Origin: Sphaerodactylus townsendi
Taxonomy: Eukaryota
Length of the DNA stretch: 64,000 bases
Direction: 5' to 3'
Assembly (NCBI RefSeq): GCF_021028975.2
Contig: NC_059436.1
Coordinates: 35,960,001 to 36,024,000 of the forward strand
Part shown: positions 9,197 through 52,499 of the stretch, piece by piece
Numbering within the stretch: position 1 is the first letter of the stretch
Layout of the letters: each line of letters opens with the position of its first letter
The notes under the pieces: generated by a model
Database searches by the model: none
What the model was told of the DNA's origin: nothing
Seen by the model: the letters and a program-made list of their open reading frames with translations, nothing else
Translations under genes and position numbers: made by a program

Positions 9197-9369
9197 CTTA
9201 CAGGCGTGATCAGAAAGGCAAGAAAGGAACTGTGGAGCTTAAAAAGAAAGACAAAGATAAGAAGGAAGATTCTGAGAATCCAGATAAGAACCGGGAGGAT
9301 GAGAACGAAGATGAGGACGAACGGATGGAAGAGGAGGAACAAAATGAAGAGGAGGAAGTGGATAACTGA
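9197..9369 (+). CDS. POLE3: POLE3 last coding exon, basic then acidic tail ([10 protein letters not shown]...EEEEVDN*)
   Basis: Acceptor TTGTAG at 9196; phase matches exon 3; TGA 9367-9369; candidate poly(A) signal ATTAAA 10038-10043. Confidence 0.95.
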
Positions 9370-11035: not shown

Positions 11036-11487
11036 TGTAGTCTTGCCCACGAGGCCCCAAGGAAGAGACGAGACGCGGAGATTTCATCTGGTGGAGAGCG
11101 CCAGCAGCAGGAAGCGTGGGATCCCGTGATCCTGGCAACTCTGCCGTGTGCTCACCCCTCACACCTTTTATTAGGGTTTCACTGGGGGCGTGTAAAGGGG
11201 TCGGGCAGGCGGGAGAACGGGAGATCATCATGTGATGTATGATCTCATCGGGTGGCTACGTGCGGGAGGAAGCATCCGCGTCCGGGCCTAATCCTCACCT
11301 GAGGGCAAGAGCCCCTTTTGTCCCATTGTGTGGGACAGCTGGTGACCGCGAGTCAGGTAGTTCATGACCCGTGACTCATGGGGGAGCGGGGGTTGGGGGA
11401 GCGTGTGCACCCAGAAGGCCGTAGCCGGCACCGGCATGCCAGGCGCTCCTTCTACGGTTCTGCTGGGTTCGCGGGCTCACCCCTACA
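11036..11487 (-). mobile_element. Solo LTR (452 bp)
   Basis: TGTAG...CTACA inverted ends; 5-bp flanks TTGCT/TTGTT (1 mismatch); CpG-rich relative to flanks; AATAAAAGG on minus strand ~11165-11173. Confidence 0.7.
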
Positions 11488-14365
11488 TTGTTAACTGAAG
11501 ATGGGGTGGCTCCTGCCTTTGAATATGCACACAAAGTAGGTTCTTTCCCCAAAAGCAGAGATCTCGCTCATAAGATTTGATTGCTAAGCTTATGCACCAC
11601 AAAGATATCAAGAGTTCTTTGTGGAAGAGGGTGAACTCAGTCTCATGGAGTTCCAAGGGTAAACAATACGTTATACAATTTAAATGTTAATGACATAAAG
11701 TGTGCAAGTATAATATAGAAAATGCTAAAAGTTCTAAAAAAAGCCTATCCTGGTGATCCAAGAAAGTCAAAGTAAGAGACGTTTAATAATGGTTAAAAAG
11801 TTGTCTAATTTTATTTTAGACTCATCCAAGTCTGAAGAGTTGGGCCTCCTTTTCAGTTATGAAATGTGTTATCCATTTTATACATTTATTCATGTACTGC
11901 CACCTTTATTGAAAGATGATTTTGTCTCCATGCTGGTTACAGTGCAGCTATGCAAATATGAAATAATGTAGATTAGTCTTTTTACTAACTAGAATGTGGG
12001 TCCTCAACCTTTTTCAGCTCATGGACACCTTTGGAATTTCGACTTAGGGTGGTAGGCACAATTCCAGAATGGCTTTCCAGGAGATGGGGGCCACCCATAA
12101 ATGTCAGGGAGGGAGATCATGCATAATTCTAATGGTAACTCTTCAGTATTTTAGGCAGAAACTGCTTGATAGGATGCCTTTTTACATGAATATATTAAAA
12201 GTCTTGCTTTCACGCAGCTTGCCTTCAGTAATGCTGTGAAGATCCTTATGGTAGCAAGTGCTGCCAAAGCACATTTCAAAAAATGATCATAGCCAATCAG
12301 ATCGCCAGTGATCAATCAGAAGCACTGCTATGCAAAAGCTTCACCTGGCCCCACTCATATTCTAAAAACATTTGGCAGGCCCCAGGAAAGATGTTGATGG
12401 GTGCCATGTTGGGGAAATAGAGCATCATAATCTTGTTTATCCACCTGCCTACTGCATTCACTCATTCTTCCCTGATGCTTTAATTTTGTTTCTGTAGCTG
12501 TATGAAGTAGTTGAGGAAACTGTACTTGCAACATAACTTGCAGTGTTAGTTAGAAAACAAGTACTCTCTTTACAAGGCATGGCTTTTTCTGCAGTCCCAA
12601 AATGCCGCTTTCTATTCAAATATCTTCAGAAACTATCAGTGTCGACTCAAGAACTTCAGAAAGCTTATAAGTGTTTGTGGAGGGAACCAGAACGTCCTTG
12701 CATTGCATTTTTTTCCCTTAGCCTTCCAGAATGTATAGTTCACAAATAACCCTTTTCACAGAATTTGGTGTCCTAAAAGCTAACAACCTCATTTGATCAG
12801 TTAGTATATCTGTAGATAAAAAATTGTGTTTAAAAAACTAATTGCAACCAAGTTTTTTTCAAATATTTCCACCTAAGATGTCATTCAAACAGTTTTTGCT
12901 TCAAAAAACCCCCACTGTTTTCCATTGTGTTAATGCTTCCATTTATGGCTGTAAGCATACTTTGATTGGTGACTTTTTTAGAATGTTGGCCTTGAAATAT
13001 AGCATGATTTGCTTGTTTTTGCGAGCAAGTACCTTATAAACCTTACCTAGTACTTCCCACGATTTTAATTCCAGATCACTAGCTGAGTTAGTTTTAAGCA
13101 GCAAAGCAAAAACTGGAGACTCATAAATGTTTTGCTGCAGCATGTTCTCTTAGTCTCTTAAAGACTAAATGGGTCCTAGTAAATGGATGTGGGAACCCGC
13201 TTCGCAACTGTGTTATGTTGAGAATAAATTTAGAATGTGCAATTATATATAATGGTTTTAGCAGCAGCCAATTTGATTGCACATCCTCGCCCCAAATACC
13301 TATGGAGTCGAGTGCCTGTTACACATAACAGAAATCTCAAGAAGCAGGTGACATTTAAAAACTTCCTCTACCATCAGCTGGACAAGATAATACTGATCTG
13401 GATGGAGCAATGAGATGCTGCAATAAGGTAGCTTTGCATCAGCTTGGCTTGAACATGACTCTAAGAACCAAGATTTCCGAATTCCAGAGGGTAGGAGTTG
13501 GCACATGGGGCAGCAGTTCTTATCAGATTACACAGAGAAGAACTCAGAAGTGCATCTAAAAAGTCAGGAAAAGTTATTTTTTAAATTATTTATTACTTAT
13601 CCCCCATCATGCAGCTCAAGGTGGTGTATACTGAGAGATTCCCATGTGTTCTTTAGGTACCTATCAGCTCAGACAAGGCTGCCAGCTCTTGTGCCATCCA
13701 ATCAAAACCTGGTCCCAGTTTAGGAGAGGTAAGGTTTCCACATCCTGAGCTGTGTATTGTGTGATTGGATCAACTAAATGCTCCACATGCCTTTTGGATT
13801 GGATCAACTAAATGCTCCACATACACAGCAAGTATATTTTATCATGTACACCATCACTCTGCAACTTATGAAGCAAGACTTGAAAATCCTTTTGTTTTTG
13901 TCCAATCAGGTTTTGCAATAATTTTCCATATTTTGTTTCTCTCCCCAAGGGAGACCTAAAGAAGCTTCCAACCTTGTTTTACTCTCCTCCATTTTATTCT
14001 AATATCTACAATCTGGCAAGGTAAGTTAGGCTGAGAGAGAAGAGCGGATCAAGGTTATCTAGCAAGCTTCCACAACACAAGTGAAGATTCGAACCTGGGT
14101 CTCCTAGGCCCTACTCAACCATTCAGACCACAGTACTATGCTGACTGTAACACAGCCCTATTGAGCAGAGATATGAAGCATGCCCTCTTCTTAGCCAACA
14201 GTTCTAGTTTCAAAAAGGCTCCAAGGACATGTTTGTGAAGCTGTGTGACAGAAACTGTGGTAAAGACTTGTGTAATGTTAAAAGCTGCTATGCTGTCAGA
14301 CTTGGACACTGGGCCTCATTCCACGATTATTAGGACACTGGCACTGACAGCCCCTCCCCGTCCAT

Positions 14366-15934
14366 CAGGGCCAGCAAGGGAGGGAGGGCGGCCAGAGTCT
14401 CCCCACCGACGACGACGACCCTGCAGAAGAGCTCCCTCCTCCTTCTCCCCGCCCGCCGCTTCGCTCATGGGCCCCCTGGACGCTTCCGCCTGTACAGCCC
14501 CGCCGGCCAATCAAGCGGCAGGAGGAGGAGGAGGAGGAAGGGCGGCGGCCCAATTGGCGCGCTCTCTCGGGACTCGTCACCCCGGAGGCGACGGGGAGGG
14601 AGGGACGGGCTCCCGTCATTGGCTTCAAACGCCTCCTCCGCACTTGGCCTGGCTCCCCGGGACCCCCCCCCCCCCCCGTCCTGATCGGCTGCCGCAGCTG
14701 AATAAGAACTGCCCCACAGTGCTCGGAAACCCCCCCGTCCCTCCCTTGGACCACTCCACGCTGACCGCCGCCTTCGCACGAGACCCCACGTGGATGTTAT
14801 GGGGTGATTCCACTATCTTCCCAGGCCTCTTTGAGCTGGACAGCCCGTTGGGACAATGTAGCCGAGAGCCTAGGGCGCTACCTTCGCACGAGGCCCCACG
14901 TCGAGGTTGTGGCGTGTCCGAGCCTCTTTGGGCAGGGGAGCCGCTGGGGATGCTGCTGCCCTCCAGTGGCCAAAGGTGTGAATTACGAGCGCAACCACCA
15001 CCACCACCACCACCACCACGCGGCATTTCTCAGGTTATAGTTGGTATAATGTGGCGTGTCTCTTTGGGCAGGGAAGACACGGCGGAGGGCTCTCCGAGAG
15101 TGTGGTAACGCTCCCGAGATATTGCTAACTTTTCCCGAGAGCGTTGTAATGCTCTCCTAGATCGCGCTGACTCTTCCAGAGAGCGTGGTAGCGCTCTCCA
15201 AGATCGCGTTGGCTCCTCCCGAGAGCATTGTAACGCTTTCCAAGATCGTGCTGACTCTTTCCGAGAGCGTTCCAACGCTCTCCGAGATCCTGCTAATGAG
15301 CCCTCCGCAGCGGCTCCCCTGCTCAAAGAGACACGCCACATCATAGCAACTATAACCTGAGAAATGCTGGGGGGGGCGGGTTGCTCTTGTAATTCACACC
15401 TTTGGCCACTGGAGGGCAGCAGCATACCCAGCGGCTCCTCTGCCCAAAGAGGTTCGGACACGCCCATAACATCCACGTGCGGTCTCGTGCGGCGGTCAGC
15501 GTGGCTGGTCCAGGGGAGGGACGGGGGTTCCGACCACTGTGGGGCAGATTCTTCTCAGCTGCGGCACCCGATCAGGACGGGGGAATGGGGGTCCCGGGGG
15601 AGCCAGGCCAAGGTGGGGGAGGCGTTTGAAGCCAATGACGGGAGCCCCTCCCTCCCCGTCGCCTCCGGGGTGACGTGTCCCGAGAGAGCGCGCTGATTGG
15701 GCCGCCGCCCTTCCTCCTCCTCCTCCTCCTCCCCCTCCTGCTGCTTGATTGGCCGGCGGGGTGCCGATATTTTATTTTGGTGCAGATATGTCTAAAAATG
15801 CACACAGACCCCGCAGGCACCAATGACCTGTGCAAAACAATTTTTTGGTCGTGGTGGGGTGGCCGCCCATGGGGGGTGGGGGGAATCCAACTCAGGTTTT
15901 GCCCAGGGCTCCAGTTTGCCTCCTTACGCCCCTG
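14366..15934. other. CpG-rich composite element: ~1.26 kb imperfect palindrome with central tandem array, possibly bounded by hAT-like ends
   Basis: Arms 14498-15092 and 15298-15761 are reverse complements; centre is a 21/42-bp array; right end ...CCTTACGCCCCTG resembles a hAT terminus; left boundary uncertain. Confidence 0.7.
15093..15297. repeat. Tandem array of ten ~21-bp units with alternating A/B (42-bp) higher-order structure
   Basis: A ~CCGAGAGCGTTGTAACGCTCT, B ~CCAAGATCGCGCTGACTCTTT, five of each. Confidence 0.85.
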
Positions 15935-16329
15935 CCATTGATAATGGAAAATACTTCTTTATTCAACAAGGAATTAAATTGTAGAAATTCTAGCCAATGG
16001 ACATCGTTGGTCAGGAGCATGAGTAGCTTTAAAGGGGATGGAGAGATTAATTCAAACAGCTGCTAGTCACAGCGACTGAAGGGATTTTCATAGTCGGAGG
16101 CATCAAACTTTTGATTAGGAGTGATGAGAAGTAGCTTGAAAAGGAGGCCTTGCATGTGTGTGCTGGCAACTGGAGAACTGCTGGGTTTAACCAGGTGCTA
16201 GCCTAGGCGGGTCATTGATCCGATCCTCAGACCTGAAATAAATCAGATAAATGTGCAGAGTGCGCTTTCCTGAGAGAAAACTAAAACCATCAAGAAATTA
16301 AGAAGACGGTCTTCTGGGACGAGGAATCC

Positions 16330-16554
16330 TTTTGCTGTTTGAGCTGAGCCCGCACTCTCCCTCCAAGCAAGCGATTTCAACCGCAGCAGCACGGCCAAGC
16401 GTGATTCTCATCCGCGCACGGGAGGGGGGCGTGGTCATGCAAATGAAGGGCGGGCTCGCGGGGGTTGCTGGGAAAACAGCTTGGGTTGTTCCCACGCGCG
16501 GGCGGTCATCTGTGCCTAAGGACGGGATTCTAGCAGTGGACGAGCCGGCTTGCG
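16330..16554 (+). promoter_or_regulatory. ALAD: ALAD housekeeping CpG promoter and non-coding exon 1
   Basis: CpG-rich; GC boxes; octamer ATGCAAAT 16437-16444; donor GCG/GTAGGT at 16555. Confidence 0.65.
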
Positions 16555-18249
16555 GTAGGTACCGGGTCTCCTTAAATGCGTTGTCGTGCATGGCCGGATC
16601 TAGTGGGATGAGGCCGGAAAAAAGTAGGGTCTATGCTGGGTTGTCGCAGGGGAAGGTCTCCGGGGGTTAAAATATGGGTCCGTACCTGGACCCATGTCCC
16701 GAACGGGGGTTTCTTCCTTGTTCTATCTCGCAGTTGTCTGGACTGGGGTAGAGGTCACGGTGCTCCCCTTTGGAACGGATTGAGTAATCCCTTTGGATTT
16801 TTCATTGAGGGAAATGTTTTGCAAGGATTGCACTAATCCCAGCTGGTCAGGGGTTCACTGTGAGTAAAGCTAATAGAGGGGTGTGTATGGCGCATTCATG
16901 GTAGGTCCTTGGGGAGCGCCTAAGTGCTGGGGCCAGTGGCCAGCGGCTTAGTTCTTCTCGATCTCGTTTCCCCACCGAACGGAGCCGGGGTTGTGAGTTC
17001 TCCGGTGCTGTATTGTTACAAACCGGATCTTGATGCATTTTGACTTGGAAGCAGCCGGCCTTCCTGGATTCCAAGGGATTTACGCACATTGTTGAGGCTT
17101 AAGACTTCCAGTCCCATTCTGGGTAGTAACTGTCGAGCGTACCCCTCTGTAACGGTTTGCCTTCTCGTGGAAATCGGGTTAGCAAAACGAGAGCTTTTAC
17201 CCTCATAACTTTGGGAGCGGATCTACTCAGAATCCTACTCGAGTCCATTCAGTGGGGCTTACTCCTAGGAAAGCATTATTTAGACTTGCACTGTTACTTA
17301 CTCAGCATTCTATGTCTTGCGGTTGAAGTACAGGCCAATTATACAAACCCATGATGTAGTCTGGGGTGAGAGGGTGGAGAAGCAAAAGTGGTGTTTGGTT
17401 GATCTGTGATAAACGACTTGCATGTTTGCTAGCTTCTCTCCTTTCCCTTTACTTCCCCCAGTGTCAAAATGTGAATTGTATTAAATTTAAGTGCGAACCG
17501 CTTAGGGACTGGGATCTATTTTTGTGAAGCTGTGTAACTGTTCAAAGTCTGTGTACTCGTAGTAACAATTCTTGAAAACGCCGGTAATAAACAGTGCCTG
17601 TACTGAAGTTGTTGAGTTTGGGGCTACAGAATGCAGCTGGAGTTGTCTTGGGTGGCTTTAAGAGGCGATGGGGTGGGACAAATTCATGGTGGACGAGCCC
17701 TTCAACGGACTTTTGGCTGCAACAGCTAGTTGGAGTTTCCAACTTTGGAAGCAGTGAATACTATTTGCTGAGGCTGCAGACAGTTGTGTTGCCTTTGTGC
17801 TGTTTGTGGGCTTCCCAGATGGCATCTGGCCGGCTGCTGTTGAGATCAAGACACCAGACTAGCTGGGCCTTTGATCTGACCCAGCGGGACTTAGCTGCTT
17901 ATATGAATTTTTGGCTGAACCTGCAACCCTCTTCGTTGCAATGAGTTTTATGTTGCACCAGCAGCTAACGTCTTCTCAGCCTGGCCTTGAGTCCTGAGAT
18001 AAACTGAGTTGCAAAACATTCTCCCGATTATGTGTGTCTCTCTCTCTTTTATTGCTGTTATTATAATGTGTGGCTCTGAAAAGGGTAGCGTCATGAGCAG
18101 CAGCAGATTGTATCTTGCAAGAGGCTGTATTTTTCCTGATGTTCTCTATATGTGCAAAGGTTATTTGACCCATGTGGTGCAACCAGAACCCTCTGGGGAA
18201 GGGATGGTGGTTCTGAGTCTCTTGCTCAACATTAATTAAAATTGGTGGT

Positions 18250-45784: not shown

Positions 45785-45910
45785 CCCAAAAATCTCCCAA
45801 ACCAGAGCTGGCACCCTAACAACTACAAAGAGAGAGCAGTGAATCTGTAGTGTAAAGAAACTGCATGGCAAACAAACACTGCTCATGAATGATAAAGTGA
45901 AGACGGTTAC

Positions 45911-46141
45911 CACGAGGCCGTGGTCATCCTTAGCAGTGATCATGGTCACCAGATAAGTCCGGATGGCATCCAGCTTCCGCAGCGACTCGGTCCAGTGGAC
46001 GTGCTGGGTAAGGATATTCTGGTGGGCCCGTTCCTCCTCCGTATGCACCATCTCCAACAGCCGCTGCTCCTCGCTCTCGCAAACATTCCTCACGAGGTTC
46101 AGGCGACGGATCAAGACCTCTCGCGCACTGCTGGCTGCACT
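45911..46141 (-). CDS. BSPRY: BSPRY exon 3, coiled coil (SAASSAREVLIRRLNLVRNVCESEEQRLLE...DDHGLV)
   Basis: TTGGCAG/GTAACC, 231 nt. Confidence 0.93.
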
Positions 46142-46484
46142 CTGCCAAAATATAAAACGGGTGGAACCGTTCAGGGCTCCGGTTCCCCAGAATCAGCCTG
46201 TCGAGGAAATTCAGAGATTGCAACAACTGTGCTCACACAGAGGGTAACTCCACAGGGCTATTTAGGGAGGGGTGAGCCCCCTGGCATCACTTCCTAGTTC
46301 CTTTTTTAGGAGATCTCTCGTGGAATACCAAGATTACTTAAGCGATCCTGATGATACACTCCTGTTTACAAATACAGGAAGTCCACTCGGGCAACAGTCA
46401 TGGGGAGTACTGCAGAAGCCAGCAGCTGCTGGGTTATTCCACCCCACGCCCCCAAAAACCTAACAAGGATCTAACAGTCTAGAT

Positions 46485-47236
46485 CAGGGGTCGGGAACCC
46501 GCGGCTCGCGAGCCGCTGTTCTGCGGCTCCATGAGCGGAGCCGCTGGCCCCACCTTCGCCCGCCCTGCAGGCAGCAGGGCGGGCGCATCCTTCGCCCGCG
46601 GCCGGCTAGGCCGCGCCGCGGGCTTTGCCTCCTGCCCGCCCCGCTGCTTGCGGGGCGGGCGCTCTCCCGGCGGCCGGGCAGGCCGAGCCGCCGGGCCCCT
46701 CTTCGCTCGCCCTGCAGGAAGCAGGGCGGGCACATCTCTAGCCCGCGGCCGGCGAGGCCGCACCGCGGGCTTTGCCTCCTGCCCGCCCCGCTTCTTGCGG
46801 GGTGGGCGCTCTCCCGGCGGCCGGGCAGGCCAAGCCGCCGGGCCCCTCTTCGCTTGCCCTGCAGGAAGCAGGGCGGGCACATCTCTAGCCCGCGGCCGGC
46901 GAGGCCGCACCGCGGGCTTTGCCTCCTGCCCGCCCTGCTGCTTGCGGGGCGGGCGCTCTCCCGGCGGCCGGGCAGGCCGGGCAGGCCGAGCCGCCGGGCC
47001 CCTCTTCGCCCCCTGACTTTGCTGGTTGCGGGGCCGCCGGCCCCATCCTCACCTGCCCTGCAGGCGGGGGGGGTGAGCGGGGGGAGGGAGGGCGAGCGAG
47101 TTGGCGGGGGAGCGGACGGGGGGCGAGCGAGTGGGTGGGGGGGTGAGCGGGGGTGTGCCAAATGGCTCTTTGGTGGTGAGCCAAATTTGGTGGTGAGCCA
47201 AATGGCTCTTTGAGGGGAAAAGGTTCCCGACCCCTG
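46485..47236. mobile_element. Non-autonomous hAT element with three 147-bp GC-rich tandem units
   Basis: TIR CAGGGGTCGGGAACC; exact TSD GTCTAGAT; CCTGCAGG at 46564, 46711, 46858. Confidence 0.92.
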
Positions 47237-47619
47237 GTCTAGATTGGTGCAGCATAATGGTGAAAAGAATAAGCTGTGATCCCAAGGTCACCTCAGATAC
47301 ACACTCAACCCAGTGGCCTTATATGAGCTGCTTAGTTCCCTCATCTGCACTAAGACTGGCCTAAAAGATTGTCTGTCATCAGGGAGTACATATTAGGGAT
47401 GTCCGACTGGATGGAGTCTGTGAGTTACTGGTAGTTCACCAGCTGCTGCAAAACAGCTTGTTCAACCTTGATGATCCAGGAAAAGATCCCAAAAAGATCT
47501 GAGCTAGGGTGGTTTTTGTTTCCAAAGCATTTTCTGCCAGTGGATTTTTCTGTAAAGGGCTTTTCTGTTAAGTGGCTTAGCTGATGGCTTCATCCCTGCT
47601 CCAGGCCCTCTTCCTAGGA

Positions 47620-50096: not shown

Positions 50097-51630
50097 CTGA
50101 AACAGAAGAAGCGGGAAACTGTCATTGCTGCTTCACCCTCTCATCTTCAGTTGCCTGGTTTAGTAACATCCAAAAGGAAGCATGACTCTGAGTCTGAGCA
50201 CACTAAGGATCAAGAGCTTCACCCCCAACAGATTCAGAGTTGAGGAACAAGACTTCCAAGAAATGGCTTCTTTTGCATGTATCACCAATAAATTAGTCAT
50301 TGTACTGTCACAGGCTTTCACAGCCGGAATTGCTAGGATGCTGTGCATTTCCCAGGTTGCATGGCCATGTTCCAGTAGTATTTTCTCCTGACATTTCACC
50401 TGCATCTGTGGCTGGCATCTTCAGTGGATCTGTCAGCCACAGATGCAGTTGAAAAATCAGGAGAAAATACTACTAGAACACAGCCAGACAACCTGGAAAA
50501 CCCACAACATCCTAAACTAGTCATCGTCTGAACAGAACATAAGGAGAGGCACTCTGGTTCAGACTTTTTAGTCCAACATCCTATTTCCAACAGTGGCCTA
50601 CCAAATGCCCATCAGAAGGTCTACAAGCAGTGGCGGGATTCAGCAGGTTTGCACCACTTCAGCAGAACCGGTTGTTAAAATGGTGGTTGTAAACAGCCAG
50701 TTGTTAAATTATTTGAAACCCACCACAGGAACCGGTTGTTAAATTATTAGAATCCCACCACTGTTACAAGCAACACCCAAAGGCTTCCACCAGCTGTTGA
50801 CCCACCAGTTACAGATTTTTAGAGGTAGCCTGTCTCTGAACATGGAGGTTCAATGCTGCTCTCATGGGTAACAGCCACAGGTGGGCCTCCTCCATGGATT
50901 TGTCAATGTGTGTTTGTCGTTTAGGGCTGGCAATCCAGCTGTCATTCCAAAATAGCAGGGGTGCTCAAGTCTAAACGTTCTGGAAAATGTCCCCAACCTC
51001 CCAAAAGATCCAGACCATCACCTTTACCACCTGTTCCCAAGTATATGGAAGGTGGGTCACAGGTGTGCAGCAGGAGGCCTTTGAGAATGTCTGGAGGGGA
51101 AGCCATTGTGATGCAGCAGTGTCAAACTAGGCTGAGGGAGACCCAGTTCGAATCCCACCCACCCACCCACCCCGCCCTGCCCCGCCATTTTTAGCTTGCT
51201 GGTTTATCTTGGGCAAGTAACAAACTCTCAGCCTGACCTCCAAACAGAGGAGAGGAAAACAACCCAAGCAGTTTTGTGTCACCACTGGGGAGAAAGGGGA
51301 TTAAAATTAAGCAAATAAATTAATCATCACACATTCCAGAAACTGTAGCCACTTAACACACACACAAACTTCCTGGTACATGTTTCTATATCTTTGTAGC
51401 AGAAATCCGACAGGGCTGGATTTCTCCACTAGAAGAGCTTTGCCAGTTGAACTGATGCCTGACTCACATATGAGAAAGACGCCAGATCATTTTAAACGCT
51501 TAAAGGCGGTTCCGAGCAGAGTGCCATAAAAGAGAGGCAAAAGGGCCCCTTTTTTTTTATCCTCCCGGGGCAAACCCACCGCGGTGCCACCCCGGACAGA
51601 AATGCGGCAGCCCACCCCGTCCAGCCTCAC

Positions 51631-51867
51631 CCGCCGCTCGGCCGCCTCCTCGGCCAGTGGGCGCCCGCGGTGCCCTCGACAGCTGCCCTGGCTCGGGCAC
51701 TGCGCGCACACCAGCCGCCTCTCGGTGCAGCAAAACCAGCCCCTCTCCAGGGCGTGGTCGGGGCAAATGCCAGCGCTCGGCCGCCCGTCCCTGCGCCCTT
51801 GGCCCTGGGCACAGCCCGGCTGCTCCCGGCGCTCCTCGGCTCCGCTCGCTCTCGGCTCCTGAGCCAT
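51631..51867 (-). CDS. BSPRY: BSPRY exon 1, B-box (CPDH...FCCTERRLVCAQC...CRGH)
   Basis: B-box Cys/His pattern; donor GTGAGG; in a CpG island; exons sum to 1239 nt (412 aa + stop). Confidence 0.9.
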
Positions 51868-52499
51868 GACGGAGGGACTGAATCCAGGAGCGGCCGAAGC
51901 ACCTGATGCTCAGGTAGGCGGGGCGGGCTGCCCCGAGGAGCCTCGGGAACCGCCCTAATTGCCTTGAAACACGCCTTGCCGGTGTGGCAATCAGCTCGCT
52001 CGGGAGCAGGTGTTCGCCTGCTTCCTCACGGTTCTGCATTTGTTGTCCCAGAGCTTCCATGTGCGGGAGCAGTCTAGCCCTGAAGATCTAATTCCTTTTG
52101 GCAAAAGAACAAGGGACGTGGACCATTATGCTCCCCTCGCTTGGGAACTTTCCAGAGACACCCGGGCAGCGCATTTTGGAGGCTGGCTGGACTTGCTTAT
52201 AACTGGTACAGACTGAAATTACCTGTCGCCTGTTTGAATTCCGTGTTGGCTTGATTTGGCATAGAGCTCAGTTCTAGAACCTGTTTTGAATGCCAGTGTG
52301 CTTGAAATGTAGGTTTAAACGTTAAACCTTGAAATGTAGTTGGTTGTGGTGGGTTTTCCGGGCTGTGCGGCCGTGGTTTGGTAGATCTTGTTCCTAATGT
52401 TTCCCCTGCATCTGTGGCTGGCATCTTCAGAGGTCTATTACAGAGAGAAGTCTATTACAGACAATGGAATGGTACTGTTACAGACTTCCTTCTGTGATA

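What the first reader, a model, noticed from the sequence alone, without database searches (positions are those of the whole stretch)
14498..15761. 1.26-kb CpG-rich foldback: two inverted promoter-like arms around a phased repeat core
Seen: 14498-15092 and 15298-15761 are reverse complements along their whole shared length, with scattered substitutions and indels. Each arm carries CCAAT/ATTGG boxes, GC-rich boxes, TGACG half-sites, a (GGA)n run, a CACGTG and a CTCF-like site. CpGs are abundant, unlike the flanking DNA. It is not part of POLE3 or ALAD and matches no repeat family I recognise. It sits ~0.6 kb upstream of the ALAD promoter. Inference: a symmetric bidirectional promoter/insulator module, a foldback-type mobile element, or a relic of a viral or plasmid-like origin (palindrome plus iterons). 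It could form a cruciform or a long dsRNA hairpin. The arm divergence argues against a simple assembly artefact.
Basis: partly seen in the sequence, partly recalled or inferred. Interest (0 to 1): 0.8.

Follow-up and report, generated by a model that had tools for sequence, protein, structure and literature searches.

The report
Repeat-derived CpG-rich foldback between POLE3 and ALAD
The 1.26-kb palindrome is real, but its arms belong to a repeat family present in roughly hundreds of copies in this gecko and three relatives, so it is most likely an old transposon-type foldback, not a one-off regulatory device.

Summary
14498-15092 and 15298-15761 are inverted copies, 91.4% identical over 455 aligned columns with 10 indel events. 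They flank a 42-nt (2 x 21) tandem array at 15094-15289. The region is a CpG island (GC 0.63, CpG o/e 0.73). It lies between POLE3 and ALAD, both on the + strand.

It is not unique DNA. Contigs from four public runs (four organisms) give single-copy depth up to about 14340 and again from about 15936. Between those points the summed depth is 10^2 to 10^4 times higher, with thousands of contigs that are mostly 90-95% alike. The repeated block is therefore 14342-15935, wider than the palindrome. Its two outer pieces are not inverted copies of each other. Its right end is a very abundant repeat terminus. Its ends carry CACTGA/CATTGA, and a few contigs join the two ends head to tail.

The core and the arm-core junctions sit near single-copy depth. 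They are present in a second species, so the palindrome is genuine and old.

There is no coding capacity, no Rfam or tRNA match, and no viral or plasmid similarity.

Best reading: a fixed copy of a non-coding, transposon-derived foldback or composite repeat. The superfamily is unresolved. CpGs have not decayed faster than GpCs, so CpG-island-like behaviour remains possible but untested. Interest is modest.

The parts
14342..15935 (.). Whole repeated block (1594 nt) that contains the palindrome
   Evidence: Single-copy contigs of X1 and X3 stop at 14367 and restart at 15907/15908; with k = 31 that puts the branch points near 14338 and 15937. Depth rises 10^2 to 10^4-fold between them. A head-to-tail joint 15935->14342 is seen in X1 and X3.
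14342..14497 (-). Left non-palindromic part of the block. GC-rich. On the minus strand it follows the CCAAT boxes with an ATG, 16 codons and CAG|GT (exon-like; reading from sequence only).
   Evidence: Summed depth 10818 against 77-85 in single-copy flanks. At least 43 contigs in X1 cover 14400, almost all with C where the window has T. No inverted match to 15762-15935.
14498..15092 (+). Left arm of the inverted repeat
   Evidence: Summed depth is 7.5k-51k in its outer 470 nt and falls to about 1.4k in the inner 100 nt.
14766..14985 (+). Two subrepeat units of about 110 nt inside the left arm. The right arm has one hybrid unit.
   Evidence: D3 and D4; alignment A2. Other genomic contigs (X1 records 3-6) also carry 14804-14875, so this stretch belongs to the family and is not a local insertion.
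15093..15297 (.). Central array: 4.7 x 42 nt, alternating hairpin 21-mers (GAGAGCG..CGCTCTC) and spacer 21-mers
   Evidence: (D1, D2, I15, I16). Low copy: summed depth 557, about 7x single copy. X1 contig 15063-15320 is identical at depth 117. X5 contig 15148-15318 has 10 differences at single-copy depth.
15298..15761 (-). Right arm of the inverted repeat
   Evidence: Summed depth 17k-29k.
15762..15935 (.). Right non-palindromic part of the block. Its last 90-130 nt are the end of a very abundant repeat; the reverse complement begins CAGGGGCGTAAGG.
   Evidence: Bin 15806-15972 has summed depth 1.86 million in X1, partly inflated by G-runs. In each run 64-125 contigs end their match at 15934 and 32-75 at 15935, then continue into long, mutually unlike sequence (table 7).
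14342..14347 (+). CACTGA, left copy of a 6-nt direct repeat at the block ends (right copy CATTGA at 15936-15941)
   Evidence: Sequence and boundary scan. The head-to-tail joint reads ..CCCCTGC-CACTGA-CAGCCCC.. (tables 5 and 5c).
15936..15941 (+). CATTGA, right copy of the 6-nt direct repeat

Best explanation
The palindrome is the inner part of a 1594-nt non-coding repeat block (14342-15935) built from dispersed repeat families. Each arm is a copy of a CpG-rich unit present at the order of hundreds of copies. That unit has an outer part with three CCAAT boxes and inner 110-nt subrepeats. The two copies lie head to head around a low-copy 42-nt array. The right edge of the block is the terminus of a far more abundant repeat. 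The block was already at this site in the common ancestor of at least two, probably four, related gecko species and has drifted since, giving 8.6% arm divergence and loss of one subrepeat from the right arm. Shown: it is a real palindrome, multi-copy, with discrete block ends, orthologous presence, no coding capacity, and no viral or plasmid similarity. Inferred: it arrived as, or derives from, a non-autonomous foldback-type or composite transposable element that depends on enzymes encoded elsewhere. Any promoter or insulator activity would be a by-product of the promoter-like sequence the family carries.
For. Flank contigs sit at depth 77-85 (X1), 5-12 (X3), 20-36 (X5) and 32-39 (X8). Bins across 14303-15972 reach 10^3 to 10^6 in all four runs. 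13111 contigs were laid in X1, the largest class 90-95% alike. At 14400 and 14879, 26-48 contigs per run carry the family base C where the window has T. Window-versus-contig changes are biased (T>C 13 and A>G 8, against C>T 2 and G>A 2 in X1), as expected for a decayed copy of a GC-richer family. Many contigs end at 15934/15935 and continue into unlike flanks. The joint 15935->14342 appears in two runs. X1 records 3-6 are other copies that carry the 14804-14875 stretch missing from the right arm. The core is low-copy and orthologous in X5; there is no second copy in the window, so this is not a local tandem event; none of the nine longest ORFs has a Pfam match; no RNA family and no tRNA; subrepeat architecture of the inner arms. 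Earlier scan notes report many foldback and hAT-type non-autonomous elements in this genome; these are leads only.
Against: The inverted repeat stops 156 nt and 174 nt short of the block ends, and the two outer pieces are unrelated. A transposase therefore would not see matching termini. No clean target-site duplication exists: the best candidates are CACTGA/CATTGA (5/6) or an 8-mer at 6/8. The core and inner arm ends are only about 7-18x single copy, so most family members may not be foldbacks. Summed contig depth is not a copy number, and G/C runs inflate some bins. I could not compare with Dfam/Repbase or with the rest of the assembly, and no second full copy was seen.
Confidence: 0.6

Rival explanations
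1. Local inverted duplication. A single family copy, together with about 100 nt of neighbouring low-copy DNA and a short array, was duplicated in inverted orientation at this locus by fold-back repair or replication template switching. The palindrome is then a locus-specific rearrangement of a repeat, not a mobile foldback.
For: The low-copy inner arm ends (15009-15092 vs 15298-15381, 85%) are palindromic too, so the duplication covered more than the high-copy unit. The palindrome does not reach the block ends. The core-arm junction contig is near single copy.
Against: Several other contigs carry core-like arrays with different unit counts, at about single-copy depth each (tables 5 and 5c). 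The head-to-tail joint of the block ends also shows the whole block exists elsewhere as a unit. The arms are as diverged from each other (8.6%) as from typical family members.
Confidence: 0.25
2. Exapted regulatory element. Whatever its origin, this copy now works as an unmethylated CpG-island bidirectional promoter or boundary between POLE3 and ALAD.
For: It meets CpG-island criteria and is the largest island within 10 kb. CpGs are kept in both arms about as well as GpCs (28/39 vs 37/48), and only 5 of 39 arm differences are CpG transitions. NF-Y-type, CRE-type, E-box and CTCF-like strings are mirrored. The block is retained in four organisms.
Against: No expression or chromatin data: no listed run is RNA. 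Motifs are string matches in GC-rich DNA. The arms evolve at about the neutral level (8.6% between arms against about 3.4% substitutions between species in the flanks), with 10 indels. The family consensus is GC-richer than this copy, so some decay has occurred.
Confidence: 0.1
3. Assembly artefact: a chimeric foldback read or a mis-join.
For: Palindromic chimeras occur in long-read data. No single contig spans the whole element.
Against: The arms differ by 8.6% and 10 indels. X1 short-read contig 15063-15320 matches the centre exactly. A second species (X5) has the core and the same flank break points. X8 contigs cross 14470-14573.
Confidence: 0.03
4. Relic of a viral or plasmid-like replication origin (palindrome plus iterons).
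For: Only the formal resemblance of a palindrome flanking short tandem repeats.
Against: No match in 50,697 phage records. Among 72,556 plasmid records there was one 39-nt chance hit. None in IMG/VR for arm or terminus 23-24-mers. No Rep-like or any other ORF. The sequence is high-copy and dispersed in the host genome.
Confidence: 0.02

Closest known systems
Foldback-type transposons with long subrepeated inverted arms (Drosophila FB; Galileo of the P superfamily, PMC3688188, PMC2775673)
   Same: Most of the length is two long inverted arms. The arms carry tandem subrepeats toward the centre, and a short repetitive middle sits between them. It is non-coding and multi-copy.
   Different: Here the inverted repeat does not reach the ends of the repeated block. 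There is no 7-9-bp target-site duplication. The arms are CpG-rich and promoter-like. No transposase partner is known. Sequence relationship was not tested and is not expected.
Non-autonomous or cargo-carrying hAT elements and MITEs (reported as abundant in this genome by earlier scan notes)
   Same: The right end of the block is a very abundant terminus whose reverse complement begins CAG(G/T)GGCGTA, a hAT-like start. The make-up is composite, with internal arrays.
   Different: No matching inverted terminus at the left end. The 8-nt flanks agree at only 6/8. Membership is not shown.
Elements that pass through circles or form head-to-tail tandems (DIRS/Crypton tyrosine-recombinase elements, Helitron tandems, TE-derived satellites)
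   Same: A head-to-tail junction of the two block ends exists in reads. The block is flanked by a 6-nt direct repeat, of which the junction holds one copy. DIRS elements also have inverted terminal repeats.
   Different: No recombinase, reverse-transcriptase or Rep ORF. No Helitron TC..CTRR ends. The junction is rare (about 2-6x single copy) and could equally be a local tandem duplication.
CpG-island bidirectional promoters with multiple NF-Y boxes
   Same: GC content, CpG o/e, length, three CCAAT boxes per side, CRE-like and E-box strings, and outward-facing symmetry.
   Different: The sequence is a dispersed repeat, no transcript is shown, and there is no conservation above the neutral level.

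Membership tests
Foldback-type transposon (FB/Galileo-like architecture) | Two long inverted arms make up most of the element | tested here: met
   Arms of 595 and 464 nt within a 1264-nt palindrome, 91.4% identical.
Foldback-type transposon (FB/Galileo-like architecture) | Arms contain tandem subrepeats | tested here: met
   Units of about 110 nt (2.5 in the left arm, 1.5 in the right) plus the 42-nt central array.
Foldback-type transposon (FB/Galileo-like architecture) | The inverted repeat extends to the termini of the mobile unit | tested here: not met
   The repeated block runs 14342-15935. The outer 156 nt and 174 nt show no inverted similarity.
Foldback-type transposon (FB/Galileo-like architecture) | Target-site duplication of fixed length (7-9 bp) | tested here: inconclusive
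   Best candidates are CACTGA/CATTGA (5/6), an 8-mer at 6/8 and a 12-mer at 9/12, at roughly chance level after scanning many offsets.
Foldback-type transposon (FB/Galileo-like architecture) | Many copies share the same foldback arrangement at different sites | tested here: inconclusive
   Arms are of the order of 10^2 copies, but the core and inner arm ends are only about 7-18x. Full copies could not be retrieved. The window has no second copy.
hAT non-autonomous element | Short terminal inverted repeats (about 10-20 bp, YARNG start) at both ends | tested here: not met
   The right end has CAGGGGCGTAAGG (reverse complement). The left end has no counterpart; the best local alignment scored 7.
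hAT non-autonomous element | 8-bp target-site duplication | tested here: inconclusive
   GGCACTGA vs GCCATTGA match at 6/8, and only if the ends are set at 14348 and 15933.
CpG-island promoter | Length over 500 nt, GC over 0.55, CpG o/e over 0.6 | tested here: met
   14301-15851: GC 0.63, o/e 0.73, 111 CpGs.
CpG-island promoter | Transcription starts there; unmethylated, open chromatin | not testable with these tools
Indirect evidence only: CpG kept as well as GpC between the arms.
Penelope-like palindromes (seen elsewhere in this genome) | Hammerhead ribozyme in the repeat | tested here: not met
   Rfam scan of 13500-17500 at E <= 1 gave only weak miRNA-model hits on the (GGA)n/(CCT)n stretch.
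Viral or plasmid origin | Sequence or protein similarity to a replicon, or a Rep gene nearby | tested here: not met

The most novel reading that the evidence does not exclude
The arms represent a transposon family that carries a complete CpG-island-type promoter cassette (three NF-Y boxes, a CRE-like site, an E-box, a CTCF-like site, and possibly a first exon with a splice donor). The cassette resists germline methylation, so the family seeds hundreds of orphan CpG islands or bidirectional promoters across gecko genomes. The block may propagate through a circular or tandem head-to-tail form, as suggested by the end-to-end junction and the 6-nt repeat.
Probability: 0.12. Interest if true: 0.6.

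Novelty: new member of a known kind. Interest (0 to 1): 0.3.

Why it matters
As it stands, this is one more repeat-derived palindrome in a genome that earlier scan notes describe as rich in foldback elements. It should be masked, not annotated as a POLE3/ALAD regulatory device. Two features deserve a cheap follow-up. First, a repeat family of roughly a hundred or more copies keeps a CpG-island composition and shows no excess CpG decay between 8.6%-diverged arms. If general, that would mean transposon-borne unmethylated islands in a reptile. Second, the block ends are joined head to tail in a few copies. A 1.26-kb near-palindrome 0.5 kb upstream of a housekeeping gene's CpG island is also a potential fragile or cruciform site and a potential hairpin-RNA source.

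Tried and rejected
- **Second copies in the window:** blastn with words of 9 and 7 found none.
- **Typed IUPAC pattern for the right terminus:** it was one base too long and did not match even the window's own copy, so it is uninformative.
- **Rfam at E <= 1:** only sub-threshold miRNA-model hits on the GGA/CCT stretch; rejected as chance.
- **ARAGORN:** no tRNA-like SINE head in 13500-17500.
- **Pfam:** no hits on nine ORFs of the block.
- **Word-based protein search:** the 110-aa right-arm ORF was used to try to fish family copies out of public contigs; nothing came back.
- **Phage and plasmid blastn:** nothing meaningful.
- **Exact 23-24-mers of the arm and of the abundant terminus:** 0 hits in metagenome and viral contigs. 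No further family copies could be fetched.
- **Findings search by sequence:** blank, which per the operators means nothing.
- **Literature searches:** general foldback and long-inverted-repeat papers only, nothing on this family.
- **Readings considered and rejected or left open:**
  - Helitron: ends do not fit TC..CTRR.
  - Two head-to-head solo LTRs: TG..CA can be read at some ends, but the outward continuations of the two arms differ and there is no TATA box; the only AATAAA lies outside the arms (15771-15776, minus strand).
  - 5' end of a LINE: the copy would have to be 3'-truncated.
  - Penelope derivative: no hammerhead.
  - The weak inverted match 14385-14413 / 15846-15867 is treated as chance.

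Full report

Yes. The region 14498-15761 is a diverged palindrome. A self-blastn pairs 14498-14803 with 15463-15761 (86% including gaps, E 2e-99), and pairs 14876-15501 with its own reverse complement (E 1e-100). The repeat finder gives a collinear series of arm pieces at 81-97%.

In a MAFFT alignment of the left arm with the reverse complement of the right arm, 455 columns align. Of these, 416 are identical (91.4%). There are 20 transitions, 19 transversions and 10 gap events.

The centre (15094-15289) is a 42-nt tandem array of 4.7 copies at 78% match, with a 21-nt sub-period. Hairpin 21-mers (GAGAGCG..CGCTCTC) alternate with spacer 21-mers. Folded as single-stranded DNA, the whole stretch forms one long hairpin (-610 kcal/mol), as any such palindrome must.

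The arm-length difference is not a foreign insertion. The inner arms consist of subrepeats of about 110 nt. The left arm has units 14766-14875 and 14876-14985 plus a partial third. The right arm has one hybrid unit that starts like unit 1 and ends like unit 2, so it has lost exactly one period.

The composition claims hold. The arms have GC 0.65-0.66 and CpG o/e 0.63-0.71. The core has o/e 1.23. The left flank has o/e 0.17 and the whole window 0.33. The listed motifs exist and are mirrored, but they are string matches only.

**2. Context**

POLE3 lies on the + strand. Its exons read [22 protein letters not shown].. at about 7210, with further exons at about 7570 and about 8750, and the acidic tail at 9232-9369. 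I named the gene from my own knowledge of the protein; the exon pieces are too short for Pfam.

ALAD lies downstream on the + strand, with exons from about 22519 (PF00490, E 4e-17).

The next CpG island, 16301-16751, is 540 nt from the right arm. That it is the ALAD promoter is plausible but not shown.

**3. The decisive result: the sequence is repetitive, and the repeated block is wider than the palindrome**

I laid Logan contigs from four public runs on 12800-17800. The runs come from four coded organisms and three studies.

- In X1 a 1996-nt contig covers 12800-14367 without a difference at depth 84.7. A 2263-nt contig covers 15908-17800 at depth 77.2. X3 breaks at the same places (14367, 15907) and X5 within two bases (14365, 15907).
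- With 31-mers this puts the branch points at about 14338 and 15937.
- Between them the summed word depth in X1 runs, bin by bin: 10.8k, 7.5k, 14.9k, 50.8k, 1.4k, 0.56k (core), 28.6k, 17.1k, 127k and 1.86 million. The same profile appears in X3, X5 and X8.
- 13111 contigs were laid in X1, most of them 90-95% alike.
- At 14400 and 14879, 26-48 contigs per run cover the site, and nearly all read C where the window reads T.

The tool warns that summed depth is no copy number, and G-runs inflate the last bin. Even so, dozens of distinct, deep contigs over non-simple sequence, in four organisms, mean that the arms and the 156 nt to their left are multi-copy, at the order of 10^2.

The last 90-130 nt of the block belong to a much more abundant repeat. 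In each run, 64-125 contigs end their match at 15934 and 32-75 at 15935. They continue for up to 255+ nt in mutually unlike sequence (agreement 0.32-0.36), which is the signature of a repeat terminus. Its reverse complement starts CAGGGGCGTAAGG, or CAGTGGCGTACCT in the commoner variant seen among the loose ends.

**4. What is unique and what is shared**

The core and the innermost roughly 100 nt of both arms are low-copy, about 7-18x.

- X1 contig 15063-15320 is identical to the window at depth 117. It bridges the inner end of the left arm, the array and the inner end of the right arm.
- X5, a different organism whose flanks differ by about 3.4% substitutions (42 in 1221 nt), has a contig 15148-15318 with 10 differences at single-copy depth, and the same flank break points.
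- X8 contigs cross 14470-14573 and 15535-15684.

Together with the 8.6% arm divergence, this rules out an assembly foldback. It also places the structure before the split of these species.

X1 records 3-6 are other genomic copies that contain 14804-14875. The stretch missing from the right arm is therefore family sequence.

A handful of contigs carry core-like arrays with other unit counts (tables 5 and 5c). A few other loci therefore have a similar centre.

**5. The block ends**

The two outer pieces, 14342-14497 and 15762-15935, are not inverted copies of each other. There is no clean TSD.

The best feature is a 6-nt direct repeat, CACTGA at 14342-14347 and CATTGA at 15936-15941.

Two contigs each in X1 and X3, at roughly 2-6x single copy, join 15935 to 14342 and read ..CCCCTGC-CACTGA-CAGCCCC... 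The whole block therefore exists elsewhere head to tail, with one copy of the hexamer at the joint. Three explanations fit equally well:

- a tandem duplication or small array of the block;
- a unit of a transposon-derived satellite;
- an element that passes through a circle and integrates at a short homology.

I cannot separate these.

**6. What it is not**

- No ORF of the block has a Pfam match.
- There is no tRNA-like head.
- No Rfam family matches, including no hammerhead, which sets it apart from the Penelope palindromes noted elsewhere in this genome.
- There is no similarity to phage or plasmid records.
- No 23-24-mer of the arm or the terminus occurs in viral or metagenome contigs.
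- The window holds no second copy.
- A word-based protein search with an arm ORF, tried as a route to other copies, found nothing.

**7. A feature worth noting**

CpG is not decaying faster than other sites. Only 5 of 39 arm differences are CpG transitions. CpG dinucleotides are kept in both arms in 28 of 39 cases (72%), against 37 of 48 (77%) for GpC and 84.5% for all dinucleotides.

Either the locus has been largely unmethylated in the germ line since the arms separated, or part of the arm differences was inherited from two different source copies.

Against full protection, the window copy has T/A where the family has C/G far more often than the reverse (21 against 4 sites in X1).

On the minus strand the left arm plus the left outer piece reads like a promoter cassette: CCAAT, TGACG, CCAAT, ATTGG, then about 35 nt, then ATG, 16 codons and CAG|GT. 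This is a reading from sequence alone, and the donor is weak. It may be the same family; I could not check.

**8. Explanation**

Most likely (0.6) this is a fixed, old copy of a non-coding, transposon-derived foldback or composite repeat. Two copies of a CpG-rich, promoter-like family unit lie head to head around a short array. They sit inside a block with discrete ends that also exists head to tail elsewhere. Mobility would depend on enzymes encoded elsewhere. The superfamily is unresolved: there is a hAT-like right terminus but no matching left terminus.

The main rival (0.25) is a locus-level inverted duplication of one family copy plus neighbouring low-copy DNA.

Exaptation as a promoter or boundary (0.1) is compatible with either origin and is untested. 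An assembly artefact (0.03) and a viral or plasmid relic (0.02) are essentially excluded.

**9. Novelty and score**

This is a new member of a known kind: a foldback or composite non-autonomous repeat. Earlier notes already record many foldbacks in this genome. I used them as leads, not as evidence. The scan has not, to my knowledge, reported this particular family on other DNA.

Interest is 0.3. The structure is genuine and tidy, but it is ordinary once its multi-copy nature is seen. The preserved CpG-island composition and the head-to-tail junction are the only parts that could grow into something more.

**10. Limits**

All four runs were contigs, so there are no strand, start-site or expression data, and no true copy numbers. 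No Dfam/Repbase or whole-assembly search was available.

Noticed in passing
window 15806-15935: Terminus of an extremely abundant repeat. Summed contig depth is about 10^4 times single copy in all four organisms, partly inflated by G-runs. Many contigs end at 15934/15935 and run into unlike flanks. The reverse complement starts CAG(G/T)GGCGTA, which is hAT-like. A commoner subfamily variant (..AGGTACGCCACTGC) shows up among the loose ends at 15921.
   Followed up: partly
window 11051-11501: Orphan CpG island (GC 0.61, o/e 0.71) about 1.7 kb downstream of the POLE3 stop codon and 2.8 kb upstream of the repeat block. No ORF of note; function not examined.
   Followed up: no
window 17142-17308 and 17327-17561: Another repeated piece: depth about 30x single copy in X1 and elevated in all runs. 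Next to it is a species difference: the X5 contig has 46 nt where the window has 235 nt (17327-17561), suggesting a lineage-specific insertion or replacement.
   Followed up: no
window 13969-14135: Short stretch at about 8x single-copy depth in all four runs; a small repeat fragment just upstream of the block.
   Followed up: no
window 13763-13822: Perfect 26-nt direct repeat (GATTGGATCAACTAAATGCTCCACAT) with 34-nt spacing, giving a 60-nt local tandem duplication.
   Followed up: no
window 45901-47251 and 51451-52101: Two further large CpG islands (GC 0.65-0.66, o/e 0.76-0.79), presumably promoters of downstream genes; not examined.
   Followed up: no
window 14432-14542: Sub-threshold Rfam hits (MIR6426, mir-4433; 21-25 bits against gathering scores of 77-96) on both strands. 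They are caused by the CCT-rich stretch pairing with the (GGA)n run and are judged chance.
   Followed up: yes
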